This document shows, piece by piece, positions 2,177 to 25,039 of a stretch of 64,000 bases of DNA (the stretch's first letter is position 1; each line of letters opens with the position of its first letter). The stretch spans positions 12,782,698 through 12,846,697 of the forward strand of contig OZ037765.1 of NCBI GenBank assembly GCA_964035545.1, given 5' to 3'. The notes beneath the pieces are model-generated. The model worked only from the letters and a program-made list of their open reading frames with translations, ran no database searches and had not been told where the DNA came from. The translations under genes and the position numbers were made by a program. Source of the stretch: Bugula neritina (taxonomy: Eukaryota; Animalia; Bryozoa).

Positions 2177-5100
2177 GACAGACTAATAAATATTGCCGTT
2201 GAAACTGTGCTGCATGCTTCTTACTAGAATTATACAGTTGGCGAGAGTTGTATAATATGCCTTCGCATTGCGGCAACTCATTAATATACCGCATGACCAA
2301 CGTATTGTAGTCAAACAGACAACATGCTTTACGATACTATTGTATTTTTACTAGAATCTCCGTTTTTAGAAATGATAATAGTATGCAGTAAATTGGAAAA
2401 AAAATAATGCAAAAAATAGTGATAGCATAACTGATAGTCATCACAGTAGAACATAGAGGTATTCTATCAAAAGCTAGATCAATTTTTTTATCTTTTCTAA
2501 ATATGCAAGTATTGAACCGCATTAATTTTATTCTCTCAGGTAAGTTGCATCTCATTTTATGTAGAAAATAGCTGGTAATTTTGATATTTTTAGCAGCATG
2601 TAATTTTATAAATACAGAACACAGACTGGAAAGTAAAGTTTCAAGTCTGAAATGTGAAAGTTAGTTGGAAAGTAAACCTCAATCCGAGTCTTCATAGTAT
2701 AGCGTTTTGTAAGATACACAACTCCTTACTAACTGGTTTAACAGTTATATTTCAACTAATGCTAATTATTCCTGTTTTTAAACATACATGCAACCTGTAT
2801 GTGTGCAGTAGCTTGTATATTATATTATTTTAAGTCCCTTTCCTAATTGATCCATTCAACAATGAAGTTTAATCATGTTTTTGGCGGGATAACTCGATGT
2901 TTTCACTTTATGGAATGTAACTATGAATACTCTTGATATGTTTAATTAGACAGATTTACTATTATATCCAAAACTTGATTTCTCATTTCAATTACATCTA
3001 TTGGCCAAAAATTGTAACCAGATCAAAGTCATGTAATACTATATTACCGTGCGACTCTAGCTGAAACTGAATTGGAAAGTAACAAATATTAAAAGTAAAC
3101 ATTTTTATCTACAAAAATTTTTTTTAATACTAATATGTTTCAAAACTGTTTCAACTTCTATTCATTTGGTAACCAATAACTTTCAATATCTAGTCTCGTA
3201 ACTGTAAGATAAATCAAGTTCATGTTTTTCAAATGGCCATCAGAAGTTGCCTTGCAGCCTTGCTTATAAGTTGTCAAAGAAGTTTAACTTTTTGCCTGCA
3301 TCAGTTGAAGACAGTAGCTAGACACCATAAATGATGGTTTCAACTTTTAATGATGGAATTTAAAGTTGGCACTAGAATATATGCATTAGGAGTTCAATAT
3401 AAAGTGAAAGTATGCTAACAACTCATTTTTTGCCCGAATTGCATTTGCGCAGTTACAATAGGCAAAAAAATTATGTTAGCTAGAATGAGTATGAATATGT
3501 TAAATATATATTTAAAGACATGATATAAATAATTTTTTATGAAATAATTACTTAAAATTTGCAATGTAAATGCATGTATTTTTATCATTAATTAGCATCA
3601 ATAATTAGTACCAATTGTTATATACTAATGTTTTTAAAATTCAAAAAAGGAATCTGAAATAATGGCAAGAATAACTTACAGAGAAATATCTACCATAGAA
3701 CCCCATTGGTCATCCATAATTGTGTCAAACACTCCTAATAATTCCGAGCAAAAACAAACTGCATCAAGTGAACATAAATAGCTTGTAGTATGATGAAGAC
3801 TACACTTTGTAATGGTATGATTTGAAAAAACAAATTAAGTTCAATTTCTTCAGGTTATGCACTAGGTCGATATAATGACTGATTACAGAATAATAGTAGA
3901 AAACAATAAACCTTATATGGTGCCATTGTTATTTCATTGATCTACCTAATATTCCACCATTAAATCAATCTGGCTTATACTACTCAATTACTTGTATGCC
4001 AAGTGTTATATAAACTTGAAACAATAACATCATTGTAATAGTTTCTTGCAATGTAAGCAAGTAATTACACATTAGGTAGAGGTTCCAAATAGAAATGTTT
4101 GAGTCTATTAGACAGTACTCAGATTCTCAGATACTAATTATCACACTATAATTCTTCATCTATATTCTATTACATCAGTTGTACATGTCAGTAATCTTAG
4201 ATTGAGAACTCTAATATGCTCTATTACAATAGTATTATTATCTAAGAGCTTCGACATCCATTGTATTAAGTATTAATATTATATTTTTCAATAAATCATT
4301 GATAGAATGTAATAGTAATTTTGATAAAATAAACTGACTATACTAAATTAAAAAGGAATTCTGCCAAAAAAAAAGTTTTATTGAAGATATGCTATAAAAC
4401 CATTAGAAAATTTAATTAAACTCCAATCTTACTGTTCATGTTTGGATAAATTCTAAAATTACAATGCAAACTGAATTTAAAATGGAAGAGCTTCATTGCA
4501 ATGTTCTCAGACCAAATTTCAAAATCTGTTAATATTTCTTTGAACAATCAGTTGGCTGGAAGACTTTCAGGTTTTTTTTTAGAGTTTATAAGCCAATAAC
4601 ATTTTCTTCAAGTTAGGCAGCTAAACTAGTTATTTTCTTACTATAATAACTATAAATCTATAACAGTATCTATTGGTTTTTGCAGTTGTATGTTAACTTG
4701 TATACCAGAAGAGTTGAATGGAATGAAGCACTTTAAACAATCCAAATCACTCACACAAAACTTAGACTAGATGTTGCAATATAGTATTCTATAGAAAGAA
4801 TGCACCTTATACCCTAAAATGGCTAATACAATAATATTGAACAGTAGGCTTAGGCTTGGTTTATGTAGACTGCAGCATAACATAGTAGAATAGGCAACTA
4901 AATACACAAAAAACTTATTATATTCAAAATACTATAAAATCTTGCAATGTTCATGCCCTGACTTACTGAATCAATAAAATATATACTTCGCTTAAATTCA
5001 TTTTCATTTAATACACTTTTGAGTTTAAATTTCTAAAGTTTGGAAAAAAACTAAAAGTACACTCAATTTTTTAATAAATTATCAGCGGAAGCAATAAAGA

Positions 5101-5759
5101 ACCCAAAAGTATAAGAGTCGCCTCAAAGCAGACAAAATGGGAGATAAATCCAATGCAATAACTTGTACCATTTGCTGAACATGGTAAGAAAACTCCAAAG
5201 TACACTAAGTAGAAATAGCAGTTGCAAAGTGTAGCTGTAGAACCAGACACTGAACAATTTGAATATATATGCTGTAGAGTGAATGGCAGAAAATAATGAA
5301 GTGGGTTTGCATCATAGCTAGAAGCTACTGAGATATTATAAAGATGGAACAAAGGATATTATTAAAAGGCTACAACCATGGCATGCCCAACCAGCTACGT
5401 CTATATCGTTTCAAGCATAATTAGAGATTAAAACTCAATATCAGACTGTAAAGATAGACTGGAAAAAGACAAATGATGGTACAGATTAAACTCTCATGAC
5501 AGAAAGTTGATTTCAGGGTAGTGGGTTATAACTAAGCAATCCAACATTATCATATACTGGGAAGAGAGTGAGTGCTGAGCCAGGAGGCCGACACCCCATG
5601 GACTACTCTTGCTGTATAAATGAGAAAAGCTCATAGCACTACGTAACTTTCTCACCAGAAGCCAATAATAGCCAAAAAAGTTCAACCTCTCAAGTTGGGC
5701 AGCACCTGATACTTAGTCTGGACTAATTGGTGGAGTTTCTGATGAGCTCAACAAGTTCG

Positions 5760-5855
5760 AATTGGGGGTTTCAATAAACCCCAACTCCAAGTGCAAAAAC
5801 TCCAAACTACTGCACTCAATCACCCCCAACTCGGAGCTGTTTATAGAACAATTCG
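5760..5855. mobile_element. Partial copy of MITE family A
   Basis: CCAAACTACTGCACTCAATCACCCCCAACTCGGAGCTGTTTATAGAACAATTCG matches the right arm of the element at 14572-14694. Confidence 0.7.
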
Positions 5856-8343
5856 ATTTCACGGCTGATTTATTAGAACATGTTCTTTACAAACATAAAA
5901 CATCTATAACATGCATCATACAAAATCAATACATTTAATGATTACAGGCTTAAGATAGTTATTCATACTTCGAAAATATATTTGGTGGTTTATAGAGTTG
6001 CCTTACCATAGTAATTAGTGTGCAATTAGAAACATTGTTTGTGCTGAAGAATGGACAAGCCTTACAACAACTATTTACATAAATGGAGTTAATGTTAGCA
6101 GGTTATACTAAGCAATGAATATTAAATATTGAATATTTATTTGTTAGGATATATCATATATGGTCATGATGAGGAGTCTCATCACAAATTTTGTAATAGA
6201 ATATTTTCAGTATGACTGCTGTTTGTATTATGTAAGGCTCATATAACTTTTGAAGTGGCATTGAGCACCTTGACTTAAATTTGCACATCTTTTAAGCATG
6301 CGTATGACGTCAGAATAGTCATTTATGCTTTTGTGAATATATATACACCCCTGATTGAGAAATACTAAAACATAAAAACTGGGAAAAGTCAAAAACTTTT
6401 ATCAGAGTAACTTAACTTGAGTCTCCGAGTTTTCAGCTGTATGTTATGTTTAGAACTCAACTATTAAATAAATCTTTTTAATTTATTTTTTATCTGTTCC
6501 ATTATAATTTTTTGTTTAATCAAATAATATAATATCAATGCACTTATTTATAATAACTATAGTTTGAACATAGTCTAGCTAAGCTATTTGCTATCATTAC
6601 AGTAGCAGTTTAGTAATTGAGCTGTTACAGTATGAATTTTCCCATAGCCACTGTACCAACATGTAATAACCATGCAGGAAAACAGGACACAAGACCAACA
6701 GGTTTTATAAGAATGGCTTCAGTGCATAAATGTGTATGTATAGATGTGGAATTTTGTAAATTCATGATATTAAAAAGGTTTGCAAATCACAAACAATACA
6801 CCTTAGAAATGTAAAAGAAGGCTGTATTTAAACCTGCTTTGTAAAGTATGCTGCTAAGTCAAATAGTTTTATTTTTTGTTTTAAACTGGTGAACTATAGA
6901 CTATAGAGTATAGAGTATTACTCTACATACCTAACAACAACCAATACAAAGGAAGATGTGTGAATATGAACTCAATGTGCTGCTATAACTTTGCTAAAAT
7001 TATGAATGTAAATTAAAGGACTATTTCTCTGTAGATTTCATTTTACTGGCATATGCATTAATAATTGTAGGTTCACATAATTATTTTCAACTCTGCATGG
7101 CTACACACTTTGCTATGTTATGTAAAGTACTGTGCCAATGTAATGCTCTGCAGTCTCAAAACATCTCTAGAGTAAGATAGAACTTGAACTTCTCCAATTA
7201 TACTTTTGATAATAAAAACAATAAAAAAATTGCTTTCTAATTTTGCATCTTAAGACATTTGGCTTCAGCAACAATAATAATTACAAATGACGTGCATCAG
7301 TATATTGAATTTTGCTTTTAGCTACTCAAAAAAGCTCAAGTAACTGGCTGCATGTGCTACTTTAAAATATTTATGTGATCATGGAAATTGCTATGTAGGT
7401 GTTGCAATAACACTGGCGTTTAGCAACAGGATAATGTTGCTTCTTTAATGCATCTCTTGAGATATGTTGCCTTAGTTTCAGTTTCCTATAATATTAATCA
7501 AAAGGAATGTTTCTTGCATACAATTAGCTAGCAATAATCAATACAGGCCATGCTAAACCAACATTTGGTTTCGTGCAGCCTACAATCATGAAATGCTGAT
7601 TAAATCCATTGATTTTCTTATTAGCTTTCAGTTTTACTACTTACAGCTGTTATTACAATTATTGTATATTCAAGTTGTATTTTTAATCAATATTTCATTA
7701 GAGTTTAATAAATACACGCTTTGTATTTCAATATAATGCTAAAGTGTAGCTTTTAAATATTCAACTTTTAATATTATACTTGTAGTGCGCAATCAACTGA
7801 CCTGAATGCATTATATTTAGAAATTATAAAATATTATATTATTTAGCCAGATGTACATAAGAAACTTGTATGTTTGGCACTACTGCTTATTATTTTCATC
7901 AATCAAATACATATTTTGTTAAAACGTGAATTAGTGTATAAGGATAAAAAAAAATATATATGCAATCACTAATGAATGTAATGCATACACAATTTGTACA
8001 ACGATCAATAGTTATATAGCCAGTATGTGAATAGATTGTAAGACATGATAATATCTAAGAATAGTATTGTTAACATAACCATAGCATGCAATCTCCATTG
8101 GGTTTGGCTTGGACGGAATAATAAAAATATCTATGACATTATTCATTACTGTCTAAATACTACAGTATACATGCTTATTAGATTTATCATTTGGTCCATA
8201 ATATTAGCTATGGAAGCAATGTATCAAGACAAAAAACTATTGTCACAAATGAGGAAAAATAAAATCATTAAAAACATAGTAAAAATGTATTTACCTCATG
8301 AGCAATAGATACTTGACCTATAAAATAATAACTCAGACTATGT

Positions 8344-13166: not shown

Positions 13167-16100
13167 ATGAGTGTGGAAGCTGACTTGCAAGGCTATACCC
13201 CTCCTATTTCCTTGTGGAAATTAGTTGAGCAACATGTAGATGATCATGAAACTGACGAAATTAAAAGTGTTTTGGGTGCAGACCTTGTTGATGAAACCTT
13301 AGAACTTCATACTGAGCTAGATGCATTTTTAGAAATATGGCGAGATTGTCGAAAAAATACTGATGAGGTAACTTTTTTTGCACCCACTGTATATAAAAAA
13401 AATTTATTCACAATCTAATTTTGAAAAAAGTAAGGAATAATGACTAAATTGTCATTAGCTGCTATAAACTAATTGCTTCCGTGTACTTATGTTAATATTA
13501 TTTAAAACTAAATTTGTTTTGAAACCAGTAAAATTAAGATCTTTTGTTAAAATCTCAGTAGATGTAAAAATATTGTCATAGTGTCATTTATTTTCTGAAA
13601 TTTACAGCACTGGTTATAGTGAAATATATATGTGCAATTGCACATATTACATTTATTTATCTTAAATTTATATTGCAATATTTTAATTCTAATTTTTCAT
13701 AAAGCTTCAAGAGATAATGATAGATTTCTCAACAACCGCCATTGCATTTAAAATATCATTTTGCATTAAAATTTTATAAAAATATTATATTAGAATTTAA
13801 TTTACAAAGTAATAATTGGTTAAATGATCAAAAAAATGTTTTATAAGTATTGGTAATTTTTATTTTAAATTCAGCATAGTTCGAAGTTTATCTTTTGTTG
13901 AGGTAGCTGTATGACTGATGTGAACTTTTTAGTGTATTCAAGTAAAAAAATCTTTACGACTTCCAGAACCACCAGGAGTAAGAGATCGTTTAATACAAGA
14001 AATTAAGTTTTTCGTAGAAAATTTAAAAGAAAAAGCTCAAGGAGAAGGCAGGTAAAAACAAGATAAATAAATATTGTAATTTTTTTACAATAGCATCGCA
14101 TATGGTTAATAACTTATGACTCGTGAGAAATCTTTTCTGACTGAATCTTTTATACAAGGATACAATTTTCAATATCATTTTCAGAGAGTTTGTATTAGAC
14201 ACATGCAAGAATAACATTATTGATTATGCTACCAATGAATCAAGGCCTCCATCACATGATTTGAGTTTCAGACCAACTTCAGCTATTGGCCAAGATGGAA
14301 GAGAAACACCTTTTCTTAGTCGTGGCTCACCGTTTAGCGACAGGTAAATATTTTCAGTTATAGTATATGCATCATATTGTTGATAAGATGCAAATTATGA
14401 GCAGTTATTGAATTTATTATCAGACAGATGAAGAAGCTTGATGTTATAAACATCAGTTAAACTATAGTCAATATTTTTTCTCATTTATTTTTCAACTCTT
14501 TTCATAACAAGTGTTAAGGTTAAAGGATTGCCACAGTTCTTATAATAAGCCTTTTTACACAGCGTCATATACGAGTTGTTCTATAAGCAGCTTTGAGTGA
14601 ATGGGTGCAGTAGTTTGGGTTTTTGTTAAACTCAAGAACCCCAAACTACTGCACTCAGTCACCCTCAACTCGAAGCTGCTTATAGAACAATTCGAGTTTT
14701 ATGTAAAGTTTTTATCACATTTTTCTGACCATAATAATAATGCACAAAAGTAGCAGATAACAAACAATGATAGTACACCATTAACTGGCAGTCTCTGCTT
14801 CATTGTGTTTGTCAACAGCACATAATTTTGGTCTTTAAACTTTGTAAGCTACACACCTGATTTTCTGGCTTTGAGTTAAATTCCCAAATCTAGATAAGAA
14901 ATTGATTTCAGTTCTTTATTTCATTTTAGCTAAATTTGATAAATTTGCTTACTGTTTCTGTAAAGATAATTTGCATTCGGCAACAATATGCTATGATGCA
15001 GGTGTTCAAAATATATTATTCATTAGGAATTGTTTTTTCAAATTTCCAAAAAGATTAACAAACACATTTAAAGGCACCTTTTTAAATTTGAATGTGTCAT
15101 TTTGCCATGTTTAGTCTAATGTGTTGATGAAATAGCTAGCCTAGTGTCATGCAATGGGAGTTTGCAACAGTTTTTGGCAGTTGCCTCCTTTCCAAAATAA
15201 GCACATAAGTTAAAGCAAAATTGATAAAAACAACTTATATATTATGTTTAGTGGTGCTAAAATTCTGTTTTAATTAATTATATATTGTAATAAACATTAT
15301 TTAATCTTTAAAAATTGAAACTTTCCACACTTTAAGCACAGTATTTTACAAAGCTTTTTGTTCAAGTATTATTTAGTATTGCGTCCCTATGTAATGTAAA
15401 ATTTACATGTACCTTGCCCTTAATTTTTTATAAGTAAAAATTATACTGGAATACCCTCAAACATTGTTTTTGACTGAAAACAGCAAATATTATAATGATG
15501 TATATAGAATGACACTCTTTGCTATGACTCTTGCTTTAGAGTGACACTCTAGCTTATACAGCCTGACTAGGAATAGGGAGGGTTTTAGACGTGATCAGAG
15601 TTTATTTGAGTCACCAAATACTGACCAAACACTGACCGTAAAAACTAAAATAATAATGATACAACATAAGGCATAAGGCAAACAAAATGTACGTAATATA
15701 ATAAGTATGTATGTAAAAGCACTAGCAATGTATATTATAAATTGTAGATAGCAGCATGAAATAATGATTCAACATAGCATGCAACTACAGCCCATATTAT
15801 TAAAAACTTTATAACATAAAAATGTAATAACGATATATAATTGTAAATAGATGTTCATTACCTCTTTTCTCTCTCTCCTAGTCTACTGTTATGTTAATGC
15901 TGTGGCTTTGCACAGTCTTTCAAATAATGCTACTCTTTAGTAGTCTTACATAAATTTGATGCTGTCCAAACTGACAGCATGACTCTAACAATATTGCAAC
16001 TACTAAAAATGGTTTTGTCTTATATACTAATCCATTTGATAAACATTATTGTGTTGTAAGAGGTATGATTTTACAATTTACTATTTTGGGGTAGGATCTT

Positions 16101-19100
16101 ACTGTTTCAAGAAGTGGGCTGAAGTAAACAAGCATCGTGTGACATCACAGCTGATGCAAGCATAGCTGCTGACTATGAATCATTCTACATGCGTAGCTAC
16201 TGTTTTGGGGTAGTGATTAAAGAAGCATTAGGTAGACTACTAGCAGCTAGTGGTTAGGCTAATTTGAGGTTAATGACATTGTGATTGTGTGTGATTGTAC
16301 TACAAGTTATAATATCTGTAAACATCCTATTTCGTAACATTACACTCCCCCCTTTAATTTCTCTCTATTCACTTAGAGGGAATTAACAATTATATTATTA
16401 TGCATTTAAAATACTAAGCTAAAATACTAATATAGGTATACATGCAAAGGTTATGGGGTAAATAGGTAAATTAATTTGTGGATAGGCCTATCTAAGTATG
16501 TGGGTGGAGCTAGTCTCACACCTTTACTGTTCAACTCTGTAGTTGCTAGTTGCACCTTTACCTTACGAATTAGGTCATCTCTAGTTTCATGTGTTTCTAT
16601 CACTCTAGCTATGGGCCATTCGTTCCTATGTGTATTTTCATTTTTGACAAGTACTATGTCACCTTTGCGAATATTTGATTGCGGCTTATGCCACTTTTGC
16701 CTTCCCTGAAGATTGTGTAAATACTGTGTTTTCCATTTTGTCCAGAACGAGTTAGCTAGGCTTTGAACTTGTCTCCATCTTTTATTGGAGTACATATCAT
16801 TTTGGTCAAATTGTCCTGGTGGCGGTGGTACATGCTTTGATTTCATTGTCAAGAGTTGATTTGGTGTTAGTGGTGTATTACCATCATCTAGTGTGTTAAG
16901 AGGTCTACCATTTACTATGGCCATTGCTTCATAAAAAAATGTTCTCAATGTTGTTGAGTCTAGCCTGGTTTTATGCATATCTAACATGGAGTTTAGCACA
17001 TTTCTAACACTTCGTATTTGTCTCTCCCATACACCACCCATATGACTGGCACTCGGTACATTTGTAACAAAGTCTAAATCGTTTTCCCTTGCAAAAGACT
17101 GAATTCTTGTTTGGTTTGACTTGAGTTCTTTAAATGCGCCAACAAAATTTGTGCCACAGTCTGATCTAAGTTGTCTGATAGGTCCCCTAATAGCAATGAG
17201 GCACCGCAGTGCATTTATGAAAGCATCTGTAGTCATGTCATCTAATATTTCTAAGTGAATTGCCCGTGAGGCCATGCATGTAAATATTAGACCGTATTTC
17301 TTTAATTCTGCTCTCCTATCCTTTACAATAAATGGTCCAAACACGTCACATCCTACATAGGTAAATGGTGGAGCTGGTTCAACTCTTTCTACTGGCAAGT
17401 CTGCCATCTTTTGGGTCATTGGAGCATGTCTTTGTTTTCTACATGTTATGCATTGGTGAATGTAGGAGCTTACTACTCTTGAGATTCCTATAATGTAATA
17501 GCCTGTAGACTTAATTTCACTAATTGTCAAATTCTTTCCTTGATGTGCAACCTTCTCATGGCACTGTTTAATCACAAGTTTGGTTACATGTGAGTTGCTT
17601 GGTAACATTACTGGGTGCTTTTCATTATAGTTCAACTGTGAATCTCGGAGTCGTCCTCCTACACGTATCAAGCCATGTTTGTCTAGAAATGGATCTAACT
17701 TTGCTAGTTTACTATCTTTACTTACACATTTGTCTTTACTTAGCCTGCAATATTCATCTGAAAATGACTCTCTTTGTACCCACTGCATTATTAGATGTTT
17801 AGCATCTGTCAAGTCATCAATAGTGAGTCTGGGAGTTATGCTACCTTTATGCTTTACCAATCTTTTGACTGCACTTACTGCTTTGATAGCATTTTTTAGG
17901 TCTGAGAATCTGCTTAGGTGTTGCTCTAATGAGCACTTAGATTGAGGCTCTGTGTTGGTTTGTAAACATAATTTGACCTCTGGGTCGGAGGAATCTATCT
18001 CATAGTTACTGTCTGTATTCAACATATGTGATAAATCTGGCTGCCATAAAAATTTTGGTCCTTGGAACCAGTCTGTACTGAGTAGCTTTTTGATACTAGC
18101 ACCTCTGGATGCTATATCTGCTGGATTTATGCTTGTGTTGATGTAATTCCATTGTGCTGCTTTGCTTTTGGATAAAATTTGTTGTACCCTGTTTGCTACA
18201 AATGGTTGAAATTTCTTAGTTGTGTTGTGTATGTAGCCCAAGACTACTTTAGAATCAGTCCAGAAATATTCATTTGTTATAGGCATTGCTAATTCTGTGG
18301 TTACTACAGTGGACATTTTTGAGGATAGTACAGCTGCCATTAACTCTGCTCTTGGCATTGTTATAGGCTTTATTGATGCAACCCTAGATTTTGCAGAAAG
18401 CAATGTGCAGTGTATGTTGTCATTTACATCAACTAGTCTCAGATAAGTGCATTGACCCAAACCATTGTTACTGGCATCACAAAAGTGATGTAGCTCTGTT
18501 AGTCTGATAGTACTTAGGCTTTTAGGTTTCAAGCATCTTGAAATTTTTATTTGAGGCAGTTCTGCTAATTCTCTTTGCCATGTTACCCAACTGTTTTCTA
18601 GTTCTGGTTTTAGTGCATCATCCCAATCAGCTTTGTCTTTGCACATTTCTTGCAAAATGTTCTTTCCAATTAGAATAACTGGTGAGAGAAACCCTAAGGG
18701 ATCAAAAACCGAGGCTATTGTAGACAAAACGCCTCTTCTAGTATGTGGTTTCTCTTTCATGCTAGCTTTGAACTGAAATTCATCATTTTTTATGCACCAA
18801 TGAACACCTAGCACACGTTCTACTGGCATATCTGTGTTTAAGTTTAAATCTTTCATTGTTTCAGCATGTTCAGATTCAGGTATTGTGGCTAGAACTGCTT
18901 GGTCATTGGATACAAACTTATGGAGTCTTACATTTCCCTTGGCACATATATCAATTGCACTCTTGATTACACTGACTATTTGTTCTTGTGAGTCTAGGCT
19001 CATTAGTCCGTCATCTACATAAAAGTCATTTTCAATAAAGTTCACTGCCTGTTTGTCACTGTCAGTACCAGAGTCCCCGTGATCTCTAGCCAATGTTCTT

Positions 19101-22100
19101 AAGCCGTAAGTCGCACAAGCAGGAGATGATTTAGCCCCAAATAAGTGAACTGTCATGCGGTACTCAACAATGTCAGTCATAGTCTCGTCTTTAAACCAGA
19201 GAAATCTAAGGTAGTCTCTATCTGACTCATGTACTTTGAACATGTGAAACATTTTTTGTATATCACACATTACAGCTATTTGCCCTTTTCTGAATCTATG
19301 CAATACTCCTACTAGGTTGTTCATAAAGTCTGGTCCTTGTATCAAGTGATCATTGAGACTTGTGTTCTTAAATTTTGCTGCGCAGTCAAAAACTACTCTA
19401 ATCTTGTTCTTTTTGGGATGGTACACGCCAAAGTGGGGAATGTACCACTGATGATTGCTTGCCTCACAAGTTGTAGGTACCAATTCTGCATCGCCATTGT
19501 TTATTATGTCTGTCATGAATGCCACGTAATCTGTTCGATATTTCTGGTCTTTAAGCATTTTAGTTTTGAGGGTATCAAGTCTGTGCACAGCTAATTGTCT
19601 ATTGTTTGGTAATTGTGGCTTAGCATTTTTAAACGGCAGTGGCATGCTGTAATAATTGTCTTCTCTTTGTTTAATATTGTTGCGCATGTTATCTAAAAAC
19701 TTGGCATCTTCCTGTGACATTTTATGAGTACCAATGTACTTTGTGTCAGTATAATCTTGCTGTAGGACATTCAAGATATCTGAGCTCAAGTTCTGCTCAT
19801 GAGCCATAGCCCTATTGCATGTGGGAAATGAGTTTGTTTCATGCTTACCACTATTGCCTACAATACACCATCCTAGAGGTGTTCTCAGAGCAAAGGGATC
19901 ATTGATTGCAGGGCCTATTTTAGTTTCAAGTGGCACTAAAGCTCTGGAGTTGTCATACCCTATAAGCATTCCTATCTCTATATCTAAACCTTGTGGTATT
20001 TCACCTGCAATGCATTTAAGGTGTGGCCATCTATTGGCAATTTCTGGTGTGGGTATGTGCTGCTTGTTAATTGGAATGCTGTCCCTACTGTAAGTCTTTC
20101 CTACTTGTATCTGCTCATGCATGTTCAGTCCTCTAATGGTCAAGTTATTGTACACCTTACACTTCATTTCCAAGTTGTCAGCTGTCATTGTTGTTAGTTT
20201 AAGAGAAACTGGTTTGCTTGTAGCTGTTTGTAGCTTACTAACAACTCGGCTGGTTACAAATGTGGTATCTGACATGCTATCTAAGAGTGCATAAGTTAGC
20301 ACTTCCTCATTAGGGTTATCTACAGTTGCTAGGTATATAGGCACAACCATTGAGCACAAGCCATTTGTTTTAGCCACTGTATTGTTGCTGTTAGCTGTTA
20401 CTTGCTCTGGGTTGTTGCTACTTGCTACTTCATTTACCTGCACTGTTTCTACTTTGGTATTGCTGTTGTTAGCTTGTGTAGCTGGCTGATTGCTTCTATG
20501 TGTTACAGTAGGATGCCTTTTTTGGCATATTTTACAAGTGGCTCTATTTCTGCATTCTTTTGTCATGTGACCTATTCTCAAGCAACCAAAGCATAATCTT
20601 TTACTAGTAATGAACTTTTGTTTTTGATCAACTGGTATGCTAGCCAGTTTTCTACACTCATGTGTGCTATGATTACTGTAATTGCAGTAGAGGCATAGTT
20701 TAGCTTTGTGGTTTTCTGTACTTTCAACATCAGGAGAATGCTTTTCTATGCTAGTAGCAAAGCTAATGCCCTTATTGTTGTGCTTTTGAGGCTTATTTGA
20801 GTCTATGACCCTTGAACCTAGCAAAGATGAAGTGATTGGATCATTTAGGATTTCTGCTTCTGTTTGTACAAACTTTACAAACTGACTAAAACTGGGGTAA
20901 CTCCTGTGATTTTTCCTATGCGTGGTTACCTCACGCTTCCATCTATTTATCATGTTATCTGGCAGCTTGGACATGAGCTCAAGATTCTTTTCGCAATCAT
21001 TTAAAATTTCCAACTCTTTAATATCTTTTGCTGCTATTTCACAATGTGTGAGGAAGTCAGAAAATGATTGTATCTGCTTATGTTCATGTGGTTTCATTTT
21101 GGGCCAAGCATTAATTTTCTTTCGAAATTCATTAGCAACTGTGAATTCTGACCCAAATCTTTCTTTCAAAATTATTCTGGCCTTTTGGTATGCTGCTAGT
21201 GTATGTAAACTGCATAGGCCACTAATTGCTTCTCTAGCAGGTCCATCAACATGCTGTTTCAAGACATACATTTTACCATCATCACCTATCATTTTATCCT
21301 TGATGTAACTCTCTATGGCATATTCCCAATCTATAAAGTCTAAGGGATTTCCCCTAAATATTGGTGGCTTCGGCACATTGTTGGCTTGTATTGCTTTTGT
21401 TAAGCATGTGGCCAGGTATTCATTACTGCATGTAGAATGCTGTGATTCATTGTTTTGCATGCTGCCTATTTGCTGTGGTTGGTTGCTTTGCAAAACTTCT
21501 ACTGGCCTACTAAAAATAACTTCACTATTGCTTTCCTGATTCACTATTGGTTGGCAATTATCTAAATACTCTGCTAGCTCATCTCTAACATCTACATCAT
21601 GTTCCTCTATTATTTCCTGCCTTATTCTCAGTTGTTTCTGTTTTTCTAACAGCTTACTTTTACTTAATTCCAACTGGACATTGGCTAACTGCCTTTCTAG
21701 CTCAGCCTGTCTTTGCATGGCTTCCATTTCACTTTCTAATTGTGCAACTTGCAATTTTGTCTTGGCTGAGATGAATGAGCTTGCTTTTGATGTGTGTTTA
21801 CTGCTAGCATGTACTGAATGGCTTTCGCCCTTACATTGTTCATGTATACTGTTAATTTGCTGTGTTAAGTCCTCAAGGTGAGGATGACTTGGAGCTAATG
21901 ACTTTAGAATTGCTAAGTCAGCATCTGCATCTAACATAATTCGTTGTATGTCATCCCAAAATTCATTATCATGATTGTCTGTTGCTGCATGCCTACTTCT
22001 AAACCTTTTAATTGCACTTGTGACAGATTTAAGCCTTTTTTCTACCTCTAATTGTTTTCCCTTTGTGGATAGGGTTTTGACTCTGCTGCTAATCCTAATG

Positions 22101-25039
22101 CTATTACTACATGTGGATGTGTCATCATTCATTGTTGCTGTGTTAGTAATAGTGACAGTTAGTGATAAGCATGCATTTACTTACTACAGCTATTTATAAC
22201 ATAAATTTCGTAGGAAAACTAGTTTGGACTAGTTTGTCAAGATTTATCACTAGCCAACAGCTAATGCAAACAAACAGCTGATGCCAGCACAGGGATTGTA
22301 CCCAACTGCCCAATCAGAAACAGGGAGATCCTAATTAATTTTATGGGGCTTTGACACAATGTTTATCAAATGGAGTTTCTATAATTACAATACTTCTAAA
22401 AAATAAATCTGCATGCAAGCCTAATTATTCTAATAACTTTCCATTCAACTATTTCCTTTATAATTATGTCACTTATATGTGAAGGTGAGGGTTATATGGT
22501 AATCTCTCACCAATCTGCTGATTCCAGGTCACCTTTGTATGTAGTTGAGAGTAGTTGAGAATAATCCTGATAAATGTTAGTAATGTTTATATAGTTGAGG
22601 TGGGTAGAAGTGAGGTTCTCTTTGTGGTCGTCTTATGTTTGTCGGCTTCTTTTGTTGGACTTGAGATGGAGCTGTTACTCCCGGACTTGAGAAAGAGTTT
22701 TTACTATAGAATGACACTCTTTGCTATGACTCTTGCTTTAGAGTGACACTCTAGCTTATACAGCCTGACTAGGAATAGGGAGGGTTTTAGACGTGATCAG
22801 AGTTTATTTGAGTCACCAAATACTGACCAAACACTGACCGTAAAAACTAAAATAATAATGATACAACATAAGGCATAAGGCAAACAAAATGTACGTAATA
22901 TAATAAGTATGTATGTAAAAGCACTAGCAATGTATATTATAAATTGTAGATAGCAGCATGAAATAATGATTCAACATAGCATGCAACTACAGCCCATATT
23001 ATTAAAAACTTTATAACATAAAAATGTAATAACGATATATAATTGTAAATAGATGTTCATTACCTCTTTTCTCTCTCTCCTAGTCTACTGTTATGTTAAT
23101 GCTGTGGCTTTGCACAGTCTTTCAAATAATGCTACTCTTTAGTAGTCTTACATAAATTTGATGCTGTCCAAACTGACAGCATGACTCTAACAATATTGCA
23201 ACTACTAAAAATGGTTTTGTCTTATATACTAATCCATTTGATAAACATTATTGTGTTGTAAGAGGTATGATTTTACAATTTACTATTTTGGGGTAGGATC
23301 TTACTGTTTCAAGAAGTGGGCTGAAGTAAACAAGCATCGTGTGACATCACAGCTGATGCAAGCATAGCTGCTGACTATGAATCATTCTACATGCGTAGCT
23401 ACTGTTTTGGGGTAGTGATTAAAGAAGCATTAGGTAGACTACTAGCAGCTAGTGGTTAGGCTAATTTGAGGTTAATGACATTGTGATTGTGTGTGATTGT
23501 ACTACAAGTTATAATATCTGTAAACATCCTATTTCGTAACATTACAATGTACATATAGGCATGATTTAAACCTGAAATCATTCTTAAATAAAGACTTATG
23601 TACGTTTTATACTTTTGCATTATTTTGCTCTATGGAGTGATATTTGTAGTGAAATTTATTGCAATTTTTATGAATGTTGATTTTCTTTATATTTAGAGTA
23701 TCTTCCTCAACATATTCAACTCTCAGTGAAGACGTAGAGGCGATGGCTGACAAACTAAATATACTAAAAGTTGACGAGGTTGTTCAACATCTCAGGTAGA
23801 TTATGTCATATGATTAAATTTTGCAATCCATAGACTTAGTACCAAGTTACTATTAATATATGATGATTTTGATCATATAGTTAGGGAGCAGCAGTGATCT
23901 AGGAGTTAGGGCACTGTCTTAATAAACACAAGGTTGGCTGTATAATCCCCAGTAAAGGTGATGTTAGGAAGAGCGTTCAGTCATAATTGCTCCTTTGCCA
24001 TAATCGGAAACAAGTCTATAGCCTACTTAAAAATACCCTTTCCATTAGGGATGGTGACTATAAACCCACAATATCACTGAATAGTTTGATTATGGCCCTG
24101 ATCAGCTTTCGGTCATCTGGTCCAATTAAAACAAATTTTACATTACAGGTCTCACCTTTTGGAAGAAAAAGAGTTACTTATACAAGACGTGAAATTTCTC
24201 CAGGAATGTATTGAGGAGGAAAATGAAATATCGGTCTCATCTAATGCAGTAGATCCTACCATTAGTGGTGAGTCATTAAACAAAAAGGAAATAATATTAT
24301 TATGATTCATAATCCCAATACTAAACATAACAACATAATAATCAAATATATTGTTGATTACATCAACTAAGAATTACATTCATTATATTTGATTTTTAGA
24401 GCTACGTGAAGAAAGGTTGAAACTAGAAAAAGAAATGCTTTCCGATATATTTGTGTAAGTATTTTAATATTTACAGTTTACACTAACTAAATTGTCATTT
24501 TAACTAGTGAATGAAAATCAGAACATCCTTGACAACTGTATAGCTGCTCTTTGATTTGAGCATTACTTACCTATTAACTATGTCCACATAAATTGCTGAA
24601 TTTCATAATTTGTTTTTCAGTGTTGTAATACTAGCTTCATTGCTCAAATAAACGCCAGAATTTATAATATAATTATGCTAAACACACAAGCCTGTAATTG
24701 GTCAGCATGTCAAATATTATTAATTGATTTTTCAGAAATCAAAGATCTCTGCAAAAAGGTGTTGCGTGTTTAAAGCCCGCCAGTGCCAAAAAGCGAATAT
24801 CCGTGATTCCAATGAACAAGCCTTTAAAAGCTGTGCATCTATCAGCCCCTGATGGCATAGTCTTGTCTGGCAATGTGCCAGAGAGTGTAGTCGCCAAGAC
24901 ACAACAAACATTGCATGAACAACTCTCCGATGACTCATCACATTACTCTCAGACTTTGCCTTCAAGTCACATGACTCGGCCATCATCGGCAAGGAGATTT
25001 CGGTCTATGATAATGGATGCAAGATCAGTAAACAGCTGA
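13167..25039 (+). CDS. CCDC24: Coiled-coil domain-containing protein 24-like, ~351 aa; exons 13167-13367, 13933-14051, 14185-14343, 23697-23795, 24149-24267, 24400-24454, 24736-25039
   Basis: All introns are GT-AG and phases join into 1056 nt of open frame. CCDC24-like motifs: SLWKLVEQHV..EIKSVLGADLVDETLELHTELDAFLEIW, LPEPPGVRDRLIQEI, LNILKVDEVVQHLRSHLLEEKELLIQDVKFLQECIEEE, PTISELREERLKLE. Confidence 0.8.
14572..14694. mobile_element. Palindromic MITE-like element (family A), 123 bp
   Basis: CGAGTTGTTCTATAAGCAGCT...TGCAGTAGTTTGGG pairs with CCCAAACTACTGCA...AGCTGCTTATAGAACAATTCG. Partial copies at 5760 and 32189. Confidence 0.75.
15503..16344 (-). repeat. 3' LTR of the Bel/Pao element
   Basis: Direct repeat of 22705-23546 with no differences found by eye. 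Minus-strand termini are TGTAATG...CATTCTATA. Confidence 0.97.
16345..16355 (-). other. Polypurine tract
   Basis: AAAGGGGGGAG directly abuts the TG of the 3' LTR on the minus strand. Confidence 0.9.
16451..22132 (-). CDS. Bel/Pao gag-pol polyprotein, 1893 aa
   Basis: Three Gag zinc knuckles (CLYCNYSNHSTHEC, CFGCLRIGHMTKEC, CKICQKRHPTVTH); protease ALLDSMS; RT with WYIPHFGVYHPKK, IRVVFD and FYVDDGL; Pao RNase H (HFCDAS, WTDS); integrase HHCC plus D-D-E (GCDVFGP, SDCGTNFVG, GGVWER). Confidence 0.97.
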   Translation of the reverse strand: MNDDTSTCSNSIRISSRVKTLSTKGKQLEVEKRLKSVTSAIKRFRSRHAATDNHDNEFWDDIQRIMLDADADLAILKSLAPSHPHLEDLTQQINSIHEQCKGESHSVHASSKHTSKASSFISAKTKLQVAQLESEMEAMQRQAELERQLANVQLELSKSKLLEKQKQLRIRQEIIEEHDVDVRDELAEYLDNCQPIVNQESNSEVIFSRPVEVLQSNQPQQIGSMQNNESQHSTCSNEYLATCLTKAIQANNVPKPPIFRGNPLDFIDWEYAIESYIKDKMIGDDGKMYVLKQHVDGPAREAISGLCSLHTLAAYQKARIILKERFGSEFTVANEFRKKINAWPKMKPHEHKQIQSFSDFLTHCEIAAKDIKELEILNDCEKNLELMSKLPDNMINRWKREVTTHRKNHRSYPSFSQFVKFVQTEAEILNDPITSSLLGSRVIDSNKPQKHNNKGISFATSIEKHSPDVESTENHKAKLCLYCNYSNHSTHECRKLASIPVDQKQKFITSKRLCFGCLRIGHMTKECRNRATCKICQKRHPTVTHRSNQPATQANNSNTKVETVQVNEVASSNNPEQVTANSNNTVAKTNGLCSMVVPIYLATVDNPNEEVLTYALLDSMSDTTFVTSRVVSKLQTATSKPVSLKLTTMTADNLEMKCKVYNNLTIRGLNMHEQIQVGKTYSRDSIPINKQHIPTPEIANRWPHLKCIAGEIPQGLDIEIGMLIGYDNSRALVPLETKIGPAINDPFALRTPLGWCIVGNSGKHETNSFPTCNRAMAHEQNLSSDILNVLQQDYTDTKYIGTHKMSQEDAKFLDNMRNNIKQREDNYYSMPLPFKNAKPQLPNNRQLAVHRLDTLKTKMLKDQKYRTDYVAFMTDIINNGDAELVPTTCEASNHQWYIPHFGVYHPKKNKIRVVFDCAAKFKNTSLNDHLIQGPDFMNNLVGVLHRFRKGQIAVMCDIQKMFHMFKVHESDRDYLRFLWFKDETMTDIVEYRMTVHLFGAKSSPACATYGLRTLARDHGDSGTDSDKQAVNFIENDFYVDDGLMSLDSQEQIVSVIKSAIDICAKGNVRLHKFVSNDQAVLATIPESEHAETMKDLNLNTDMPVERVLGVHWCIKNDEFQFKASMKEKPHTRRGVLSTIASVFDPLGFLSPVILIGKNILQEMCKDKADWDDALKPELENSWVTWQRELAELPQIKISRCLKPKSLSTIRLTELHHFCDASNNGLGQCTYLRLVDVNDNIHCTLLSAKSRVASIKPITMPRAELMAAVLSSKMSTVVTTELAMPITNEYFWTDSKVVLGYIHNTTKKFQPFVANRVQQILSKSKAAQWNYINTSINPADIASRGASIKKLLSTDWFQGPKFLWQPDLSHMLNTDSNYEIDSSDPEVKLCLQTNTEPQSKCSLEQHLSRFSDLKNAIKAVSAVKRLVKHKGSITPRLTIDDLTDAKHLIMQWVQRESFSDEYCRLSKDKCVSKDSKLAKLDPFLDKHGLIRVGGRLRDSQLNYNEKHPVMLPSNSHVTKLVIKQCHEKVAHQGKNLTISEIKSTGYYIIGISRVVSSYIHQCITCRKQRHAPMTQKMADLPVERVEPAPPFTYVGCDVFGPFIVKDRRAELKKYGLIFTCMASRAIHLEILDDMTTDAFINALRCLIAIRGPIRQLRSDCGTNFVGAFKELKSNQTRIQSFARENDLDFVTNVPSASHMGGVWERQIRSVRNVLNSMLDMHKTRLDSTTLRTFFYEAMAIVNGRPLNTLDDGNTPLTPNQLLTMKSKHVPPPPGQFDQNDMYSNKRWRQVQSLANSFWTKWKTQYLHNLQGRQKWHKPQSNIRKGDIVLVKNENTHRNEWPIARVIETHETRDDLIRKVKVQLATTELNSKGVRLAPPTYLDRPIHKLIYLFTP
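22689..22704 (-). other. Non-tRNA primer-binding site position (GTAAAAACTCTTTCTC)
   Basis: Immediately follows the 5' LTR on the minus strand, lacks TGG, and is complementary to LTR-internal sequence (see findings). Confidence 0.7.
22705..23546 (-). repeat. 5' LTR of the Bel/Pao element
   Basis: Direct repeat of 15503-16344. Minus strand has AATAAA at 22808-22803 and TATATAA at 23228-23222. Confidence 0.97.
23883..24068 (+). mobile_element. Degenerate tRNA-derived SINE-like repeat
   Basis: Decayed A/B-box-like head, then a body (GGTGATGTTAGGAAGAGC...CATAATTGCTCCT...CCCTTTCCAT...GACTATAAAC) shared with 40817-40937. Confidence 0.6.

What the first reader, a model, noticed from the sequence alone, without database searches (positions are those of the whole stretch)
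22689..23073. Splicing of an intron inside the LTR would build the primer complement: candidate splice-dependent self-priming in a Bel/Pao element
Seen (minus strand): the LTR contains a 217-nt GT-AG segment with donor ...GAGAGAAAAGAG|GTAATG (23063), two CCTTAT branch-like motifs at -30 and -23, and acceptor ATTATTTTAG|TTTTTAC (22847). Joining gives GAG-A-AAAGAG|UUUUUAC. The sequence directly after the LTR (PBS position, 22704-22689) is GUAAAAACUCUUUCUC. These pair over 13 contiguous bp plus 3 more across one bulged A, against only 9 bp unspliced. The duplex 3' end falls exactly at the LTR/PBS boundary, as a minus-strand primer must. Known: Tf1/sushi-group Ty3/Gypsy elements self-prime using the first 9-11 nt of their RNA. 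Inference: here the primer may be an exon-exon junction, supplied in cis or by short spliced LTR transcripts ending at the AATAAA at 22808. That would couple host splicing to reverse transcription. I know of no such mechanism described for Bel/Pao but cannot check the literature. Open problem: the 3' LTR copy in genomic RNA must stay unspliced for the intron to persist.
Basis: partly seen in the sequence, partly recalled or inferred. Interest (0 to 1): 0.92.

Follow-up and report, generated by a model that had tools for sequence, protein, structure and literature searches.

The report
Splice-junction self-priming in Bel/Pao retrotransposons
A young Bel/Pao retrotransposon carries a real intron inside its LTR. 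The sequence where reverse transcription must start pairs with the spliced exon-exon junction, and 11 other families from six animal groups show the same design, so these elements probably prime their own copying with a host-spliced piece of their own RNA.

Summary
The element has 842-bp identical LTRs, a TACAT target duplication and a 1893-aa Pao polyprotein.

The 217-nt GT-AG segment is a genuine intron:
- RNA contigs of four runs cover both exons and not the intron, and many stop at the donor.
- Four genomic LTR copies lack exactly this segment.

The 16 nt after the LTR pair with the junction over 13 contiguous bp plus 3 across one bulged A. Unspliced RNA gives 9.

I found the same layout in 12 of 12 Bel/Pao families examined: two in this genome, two in the bryozoan Watersipora, two in metagenomes, one unnamed assembly, a sea star, an acorn worm, a snail and two fish. 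The paired bases differ between families and change together on both sides. The base three before the junction always fits exon 1 and never the intron.

No host RNA carries the sequence, and I found no paper describing this. Best reading (0.6): Tf1-like self-priming in which the primer end is made by splicing. Priming itself is inferred, not shown.

Other first-stage notes in this scan flagged the same idea on other DNA of this genome; I did not locate or check those places.

The parts
22705..23546 (-). 5' LTR, 842 bp, starts TGT and ends ATA
   Evidence: 100% identical to 15503-16344; boundaries and TACAT duplication
15503..16344 (-). 3' LTR
23221..23228 (-). TATA box (TATATAAG) of the LTR promoter
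   Evidence: RNA contigs begin downstream of it
23064..23200 (-). Exon 1, the 5' part of R. The start is only bracketed between 23156 and about 23210; the last 6 nt (23069-23064) pair with the post-LTR sequence
   Evidence: deep RNA contig cover, with many contigs ending exactly at 23064
22847..23063 (-). Spliceosomal intron inside the LTR, 217 nt, GT-AG, with a pyrimidine-rich 3' end
   Evidence: no RNA cover at 22888-23015 in 4 runs; lost exactly in L031, L032, L033 and L040
22840..22846 (-). First 7 nt of exon 2 (TTTTTAC), the proposed 3' end of the primer
   Evidence: complement of 22704-22698; this motif and its partner co-vary across 12 families
22803..22808 (-). Polyadenylation signal AATAAA, 38 nt into exon 2, so R includes the intron
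   Evidence: same position in the other families
22689..22704 (-). Primer-binding position, complementary to the exon-exon junction
22678..22704 (-). 27-nt unit holding the primer-binding sequence; tandemly repeated 1 to 4 or more times in other copies
16345..16355 (-). Polypurine tract (AAAGGGGGGAG) abutting the 3' LTR
16451..22132 (-). Gag-Pol open reading frame, 1893 aa
   Evidence: Pfam Peptidase_A17 (3.9e-47), DUF1759, Integrase_H2C2, DUF5641
23547..23551 (-). Target-site duplication TACAT; the other copy is at 15498-15502

Best explanation
This is an intact, recently inserted Bel/Pao LTR retrotransposon that most likely primes its own minus-strand DNA.

Shown:
- Transcription starts below the LTR TATA box.
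- The host spliceosome removes a 217-nt intron that lies wholly inside R.
- The resulting junction (the last 6 nt of exon 1 plus the first 7 nt of exon 2) is complementary to the sequence that directly follows U5.

Inferred, by analogy with Tf1:
- The junction folds back, or pairs in trans from the co-packaged RNA, onto this site.
- The RNA is cut after exon-2 nt 7, and that 3'-OH is extended.
- In cis, strong-stop DNA would then run from the U5 end back to exon-2 nt 8, jump to the roughly 55 nt of exon 2 in the 3' R, and copy the intron, exon 1 and U3 from the 3' LTR copy. This would explain how the intron is inherited although the primer needs it removed.

The design is ancient: the intron, the TTTTTAC-like exon-2 start and the matching primer site co-vary in 12 families across six animal groups.
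For: The intron is real.
- RNA contigs end at the donor, the intron has no cover, and one contig joins exon 1 to a sister subfamily's exon 2. That contig matches none of the four intronless DNA copies.
- Four LTR copies lost the intron precisely, each with its own target duplication.

The pairing is real.
- 13+3 bp anchored at the LTR end.
- No control position equals it.
- In a natural intronless copy, both the minimum-energy fold and the centroid contain this stem, z = -4.7.

It is conserved and co-varies.
- 12 of 12 families have 9-13 contiguous pairs with the junction, against 7-10 with unspliced RNA.
- Exon-2 starts come in seven variants, each mirrored in the primer site.
- Exon-1 ends GAG, AAG, GAA and GTG are mirrored by CTC, CTT, TTC and CAC.
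- The position three before the junction fits exon 1 in 12 of 12 families and the intron in none.
- Each family's junction fits its own site best, or ties with near relatives.
- Duplex energy is 5-11 kcal/mol better when spliced, in every family.

No host primer fits. The site has no TGG start, and the exact 16-mer occurs only in copies of this element plus one unrelated site with no RNA-family match.
Against: - Nothing here shows priming, RNA cleavage, or which RNA is packaged.
- In 5 of 12 families exon 1 adds only 3 pairs, and 2 of those the intron's AG would also give. There the case for the spliced form rests on one position.
- The one-base bulge is kept in every copy, although a primer copied into plus-strand DNA should sometimes erase it.
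- A primer carrying 100 nt or more of exon 1 has no precedent.
- LTRs that lost the intron should still self-prime, so the intron's persistence needs a further, unknown benefit.
- In the two elements whose 5' LTR alone lacks the intron, exon-2 nt 7, 14 and 15 differ between the LTRs. The simple cis model does not predict this.
- The exact 23064-to-22846 joint was not in the listed joints.
Confidence: 0.6

Rival explanations
1. Self-priming without splicing. The primer site pairs with the unspliced 3' splice-site region (AG plus the first 6-8 nt of exon 2), and the same pairing may mask the acceptor in genomic RNA. The intron then serves another purpose.
For: The invariant core of the duplex lies in exon 2. 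Unspliced pairing gives 7-10 bp in all families, close to Tf1's 11. An X3 contig spans the acceptor unspliced. The intron would be inherited with no special rule.
Against: Complementarity never runs into the intron beyond AG, in 0 of 12 families. It always runs into exon 1, by 3-6 nt. In the loach and in L074 the unspliced match is only 7, against 12 and 11 spliced. Unspliced duplexes are 5-11 kcal/mol weaker. It also leaves unexplained why the complement starts exactly at a conserved splice acceptor.
Confidence: 0.2
2. The junction-to-site stem is a regulatory or packaging structure, for example one that marks or silences spliced RNA or links the RNA dimer. An unidentified molecule primes.
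For: Long-range stems around primer sites are common in retroviral leaders. The predicted stem dominates the fold.
Against: The duplex ends exactly at the U5 boundary in 11 of 12 families and one base off in medaka. That is what defines a primer. Any other primer would have to co-vary with each family's own LTR.
Confidence: 0.12
3. A host tRNA or other small RNA is the primer, and the likeness to the junction is incidental.
For: Some insect Bel/Pao elements have a tRNA site, for example Achilles with tRNA-Tyr (PMC4580426).
Against: The site has no TGG start. The sites differ between two families within one genome and follow their own LTRs. The 16-mer is absent from the rest of the genome apart from one chance-like site with no RNA-family match.
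Confidence: 0.03
4. Chance, or a relic of an old inverted duplication with no present function.
For: The region is A/T- and GA-rich, which raises the rate of random matches.
Against: Control scans give 0 hits with the real intron in every family and at most 1.2% with any GT-AG pair. Compensatory changes occur across six animal groups.
Confidence: 0.02

Closest known systems
Tf1/sushi-group self-priming (Ty3/Gypsy; Tf1 of fission yeast)
   Same: No tRNA site. About 11 nt of the element's own 5' RNA pair with the sequence directly after U5, and the duplex ends at the LTR boundary. The duplex lengths here (9-13 bp) bracket Tf1's 11. Tf1 details are from established knowledge; reviews that mention it are PMC5443660 and PMC3601003.
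   Different: A different superfamily (Bel/Pao). The pairing segment is not the first bases of the transcript: it lies about 100-150 nt in and is assembled by splicing. The primer would carry all of exon 1. Strong-stop DNA would end inside R.
Retroviruses with the major splice donor in R of the LTR (HTLV-1, BLV, foamy viruses; from my own knowledge, not checked here)
   Same: A host-spliced donor lies inside the LTR.
   Different: In those viruses the acceptor lies outside the LTR, the intron is not contained in the repeat, priming is by tRNA, and the junction has no known role in reverse transcription.
tRNA-primed Bel/Pao elements such as Achilles (PMC4580426)
   Same: Same superfamily and gene order, with 5-bp target duplications.
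   Different: Those carry an 18-nt complement of a tRNA 3' end. The clade studied here has none.

Membership tests
Bel/Pao (Semotivirus) LTR retrotransposons | Pao-type aspartic peptidase (Peptidase_A17) within a Gag-Pol polyprotein | tested here: met
   PF05380 E = 3.9e-47, plus DUF1759, Integrase_H2C2 and DUF5641
Bel/Pao (Semotivirus) LTR retrotransposons | Direct LTRs, a polypurine tract and a short target duplication | tested here: met
   842-bp identical LTRs, a G-rich tract and TACAT. The LTR ends TA rather than CA.
Spliceosomal intron | GT-AG borders, a pyrimidine tract, and removal from RNA | tested here: met
   The exact joint was seen as a 28-nt contig end, not in the joints table.
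Spliceosomal intron | Precise loss in retro-copied DNA | tested here: met
   L031, L032, L033 and L040
Tf1/sushi-type self-priming elements | No tRNA-complementary primer site | tested here: met
Tf1/sushi-type self-priming elements | The site after U5 is complementary to the first 9-11 nt of the transcript | tested here: not met
   The complement lies at least 93 nt from the RNA start and is split by the intron
Tf1/sushi-type self-priming elements | RNase H cut at the end of the duplex frees the primer | not testable with these tools
   Needs biochemistry
Tf1/sushi-type self-priming elements | Ty3/Gypsy chromovirus lineage | tested here: not met
   Pao peptidase and Bel/Pao relatives

The most novel reading that the evidence does not exclude
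In a clade of Bel/Pao elements spread across bilaterian animals, the host spliceosome is an obligatory cofactor of reverse transcription. Only RNA spliced in its 5' LTR copy can provide the primer, while the unspliced 3' copy hands the intron on. That splits the work between spliced and unspliced forms and would explain why an intron has stayed inside an LTR since before these phyla diverged.
Probability: 0.45. Interest if true: 0.92.

Novelty: new variant of a known kind. Interest (0 to 1): 0.88.

Why it matters
How most Bel/Pao elements start reverse transcription has not been worked out; the two open surveys of the group that I read do not mention a primer site at all.

A primer made by splicing would be a new link between host RNA processing and retroelement replication. 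It would extend self-priming beyond the Tf1/sushi group. It would also explain why annotation tools that look for tRNA sites fail on these abundant animal elements.

The idea is directly testable in species with rich RNA data, such as medaka, loach and the sea star.

Tried and rejected
- L035, an LTR with 88% identity and a quite different downstream sequence, first looked like a counter-example. It is a solo LTR inside a duplicated segment that carries a KDZ transposase fragment, so it has no primer site.
- The 5.2-5.4-kb copies are not spliced-RNA products. Their two internal deletions have microhomology at the break points, not GT-AG.
- The one non-element site with the 16-mer has no RNA-family match. 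Rfam finds nothing in the LTR or leader. The window has no tRNA genes.
- I found no intronless copy of the sister family F3, so its intron rests on homology and splice signals.
- Two protein look-ups returned nothing.
- The joined exon-exon model was never sent to a search tool. I used natural intronless copies by reference and compared short strings locally.
Full report
THE ELEMENT
On the minus strand the window holds a complete LTR retrotransposon at 23546-15503.
- The two 842-bp LTRs are identical, and TACAT is duplicated at both ends.
- A G-rich polypurine tract abuts the 3' LTR.
- One 1893-aa frame carries DUF1759 (Gag), the Pao peptidase (E = 3.9e-47), an integrase zinc domain and DUF5641.
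- The nearest named relatives are from the bryozoan Watersipora subatra. Runs that hold the sequence include a 'symbiont metagenome'. The host is therefore probably a bryozoan, though this is not established.

THE OBSERVATION
- The junction pairs with the 16 nt after the LTR over 13 contiguous pairs, a bulged A, and 3 more pairs. Unspliced RNA gives 9.
- I scanned 12,472 control positions of the element's own interior. None matched as well with the true intron. Two did when any of 1,453 GT-AG pairs was allowed.

THE INTRON IS REAL
I laid contigs of four probable RNA runs from four studies on the window.
- They cover exon 1 deeply, and many end exactly at 23064.
- They leave 22888-23015 uncovered in all four runs, then resume in exon 2, U5, the leader and gag.
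- One X3 contig continues from 23064 into 28 nt that equal the exon-2 start of a sister subfamily (compare L036). It has five T, and its later bases differ from the other three copies, so it does not come from any of the four intronless DNA copies.
- Cover reaches at least 23156, so transcripts start 93 nt or more upstream of the donor, below the TATA box at 23228.
- Caveats: these are contigs, not reads, and the exact 23064-to-22846 joint was not among the listed joints.

Independently, four genomic LTRs lack precisely the 217 nt. They are the 5' LTRs of L031 and L032 and the solo LTRs L033 and L040. Each has its own 5-bp target duplication. L040 belongs to a diverged subfamily, so the loss happened more than once.

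RELATED FAMILIES
Family F3 of the same genome is 54% identical in Pol.
- Its LTR end is fixed at L054:923 by 14 or more 3' and solo copies.
- It has a donor after ...GAGAATAAAG, an acceptor before TTTTTAC, then AATAAA.
- Its post-LTR sequence has the complement GAGATAAAGTTTTTAC.
- Against the window family, two exon-1 substitutions are matched by two compensatory substitutions in the primer site, and the bulged A is kept.

Ten more elements came from other assemblies: Watersipora (two families), two metagenome scaffolds, one unnamed assembly, Patiria, Glandiceps, Littorina, Paramisgurnus and Oryzias. All show the same order: TATA, an exon 1 of 100-170 nt, a strong donor, a 115-650-nt intron with a pyrimidine tract, an exon 2 that begins with a TTTTTAC-like heptamer, AATAAA 25-45 nt later, the LTR end 66-142 nt after the acceptor, and then the complement of the junction.
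- Contiguous pairs, spliced versus unspliced, run from 13/9 to 10/9. The loach gives 12/7 and L074 gives 11/7. Medaka has 9 plus a terminal G-U.
- Seven exon-2 variants and four exon-1 end triplets are each mirrored in the site.
- The position three before the junction fits exon 1 in 12 of 12 families and the intron in 0 of 12.
- In the own-versus-other matrix the diagonal is the maximum, or ties among close relatives.
- Duplexes are 5-11 kcal/mol more stable with the junction than with the unspliced acceptor, in every family.
- The donors were picked by best match, which inflates 3-nt matches. But they share a conserved ...AC(G/A)AG|GTA context at a constant distance from the TATA box, and the any-pair null already allows for that choice.

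A HOST PRIMER IS UNLIKELY
- The site has no TGG start.
- The exact 16-mer occurs 24 times in the genome. Of these, 23 are in leaders of this family, and one is in an unrelated site with no RNA-family match.
- Sites differ between families in one genome and follow their own LTRs.

MECHANISM (INFERRED)
In the natural intronless 5' region of L031, both the minimum-energy fold and the centroid close the junction onto the primer site (z = -4.7). By analogy with Tf1:
- A cut after exon-2 nt 7 would give the primer.
- In cis, strong-stop DNA would span the U5 end to exon-2 nt 8.
- It would then transfer to exon 2 of the 3' R and copy the intron from the 3' LTR copy.
The occasional intronless LTRs would be the leak.

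What the model leaves open:
- The bulge survives in all 24 units.
- The primer would be very long.
- It is unclear why the intron is kept, given that intronless LTRs should still prime.
- L031 and L032 have a 5' LTR without the intron and a 3' LTR with it, and intact target duplications. Their two LTRs differ only around the end of exon 1 and the first 27 nt of exon 2. Ten normal elements differ at 0-3 sites.
- One possible route for these two elements is tentative: the minus strand reads through to the cap of a second, spliced RNA, which gives a heteroduplex 5' LTR.

LITERATURE
Searches of the held library found self-priming described only for the Tf1/sushi group. A tRNA-Tyr site is reported in one insect Bel/Pao element. 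The two open Bel/Pao surveys do not mention primer sites. I found no LTR-internal intron tied to priming. Subscription papers were not searchable.

VERDICT
Priming itself remains to be shown.

Noticed in passing
L054:88-184: Just upstream of an F3 5' LTR lies a reverse-complement copy of exon-2 nt 8 through the LTR end. That is exactly the span predicted for strong-stop DNA under junction priming. It is followed by about 57 nt of 3' UTR plus the polypurine tract. It is unique to this locus. The last 18 nt overlap sequence that other F3 3' ends also align to, so the end point may reflect microhomology.
   Followed up: partly
L031:501-1125 vs 4857-5698; L032 (reverse strand) 501-1138 vs 4922-5783: Two independent insertions (target duplications ACTAT and CCTTT) have an intronless 5' LTR and an intron-containing 3' LTR. 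No standard reverse-transcription scheme gives unequal LTRs.
   Followed up: partly
window 22678-22704; L005-L007, L012, L013, L019, L032, L034; L067:3433-3510: The unit that holds the primer site is tandemly repeated: 27 nt, 1 to 4 or more copies in this family, and 37 nt in a Watersipora family. Copy number differs between young copies.
   Followed up: partly
L035 (G000:C4:11717516-11726169): A solo LTR sits in a tandemly duplicated segment of about 6.8 kb with a KDZ (Kyakuja-Dileera-Zisupton) transposase fragment. RNA contigs read from this LTR into the flank and use another acceptor, equivalent to window 22768.
   Followed up: partly
L031, L032 and other 5.2-5.4-kb copies: A non-autonomous derivative lacks element positions 4150-5680 and 5841-6945. 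Short direct repeats at both break points suggest template switching.
   Followed up: yes
window 23059-23064: In run X5, exon 1 continues into sequences unrelated to the element. These are probably chimeric transcripts driven by LTRs and spliced from the LTR donor. Exon 1 is also several-fold deeper than the body.
   Followed up: no
window 22705-22710: This family's LTR ends in ATA, whereas ten of the other eleven families end in ACA and the medaka LTR ends in AAA.
   Followed up: no
L054:978-992: The F3 leader holds a sense copy of the exon-1 end (GAGAGAATAAAG). It could compete for the primer site.
   Followed up: no
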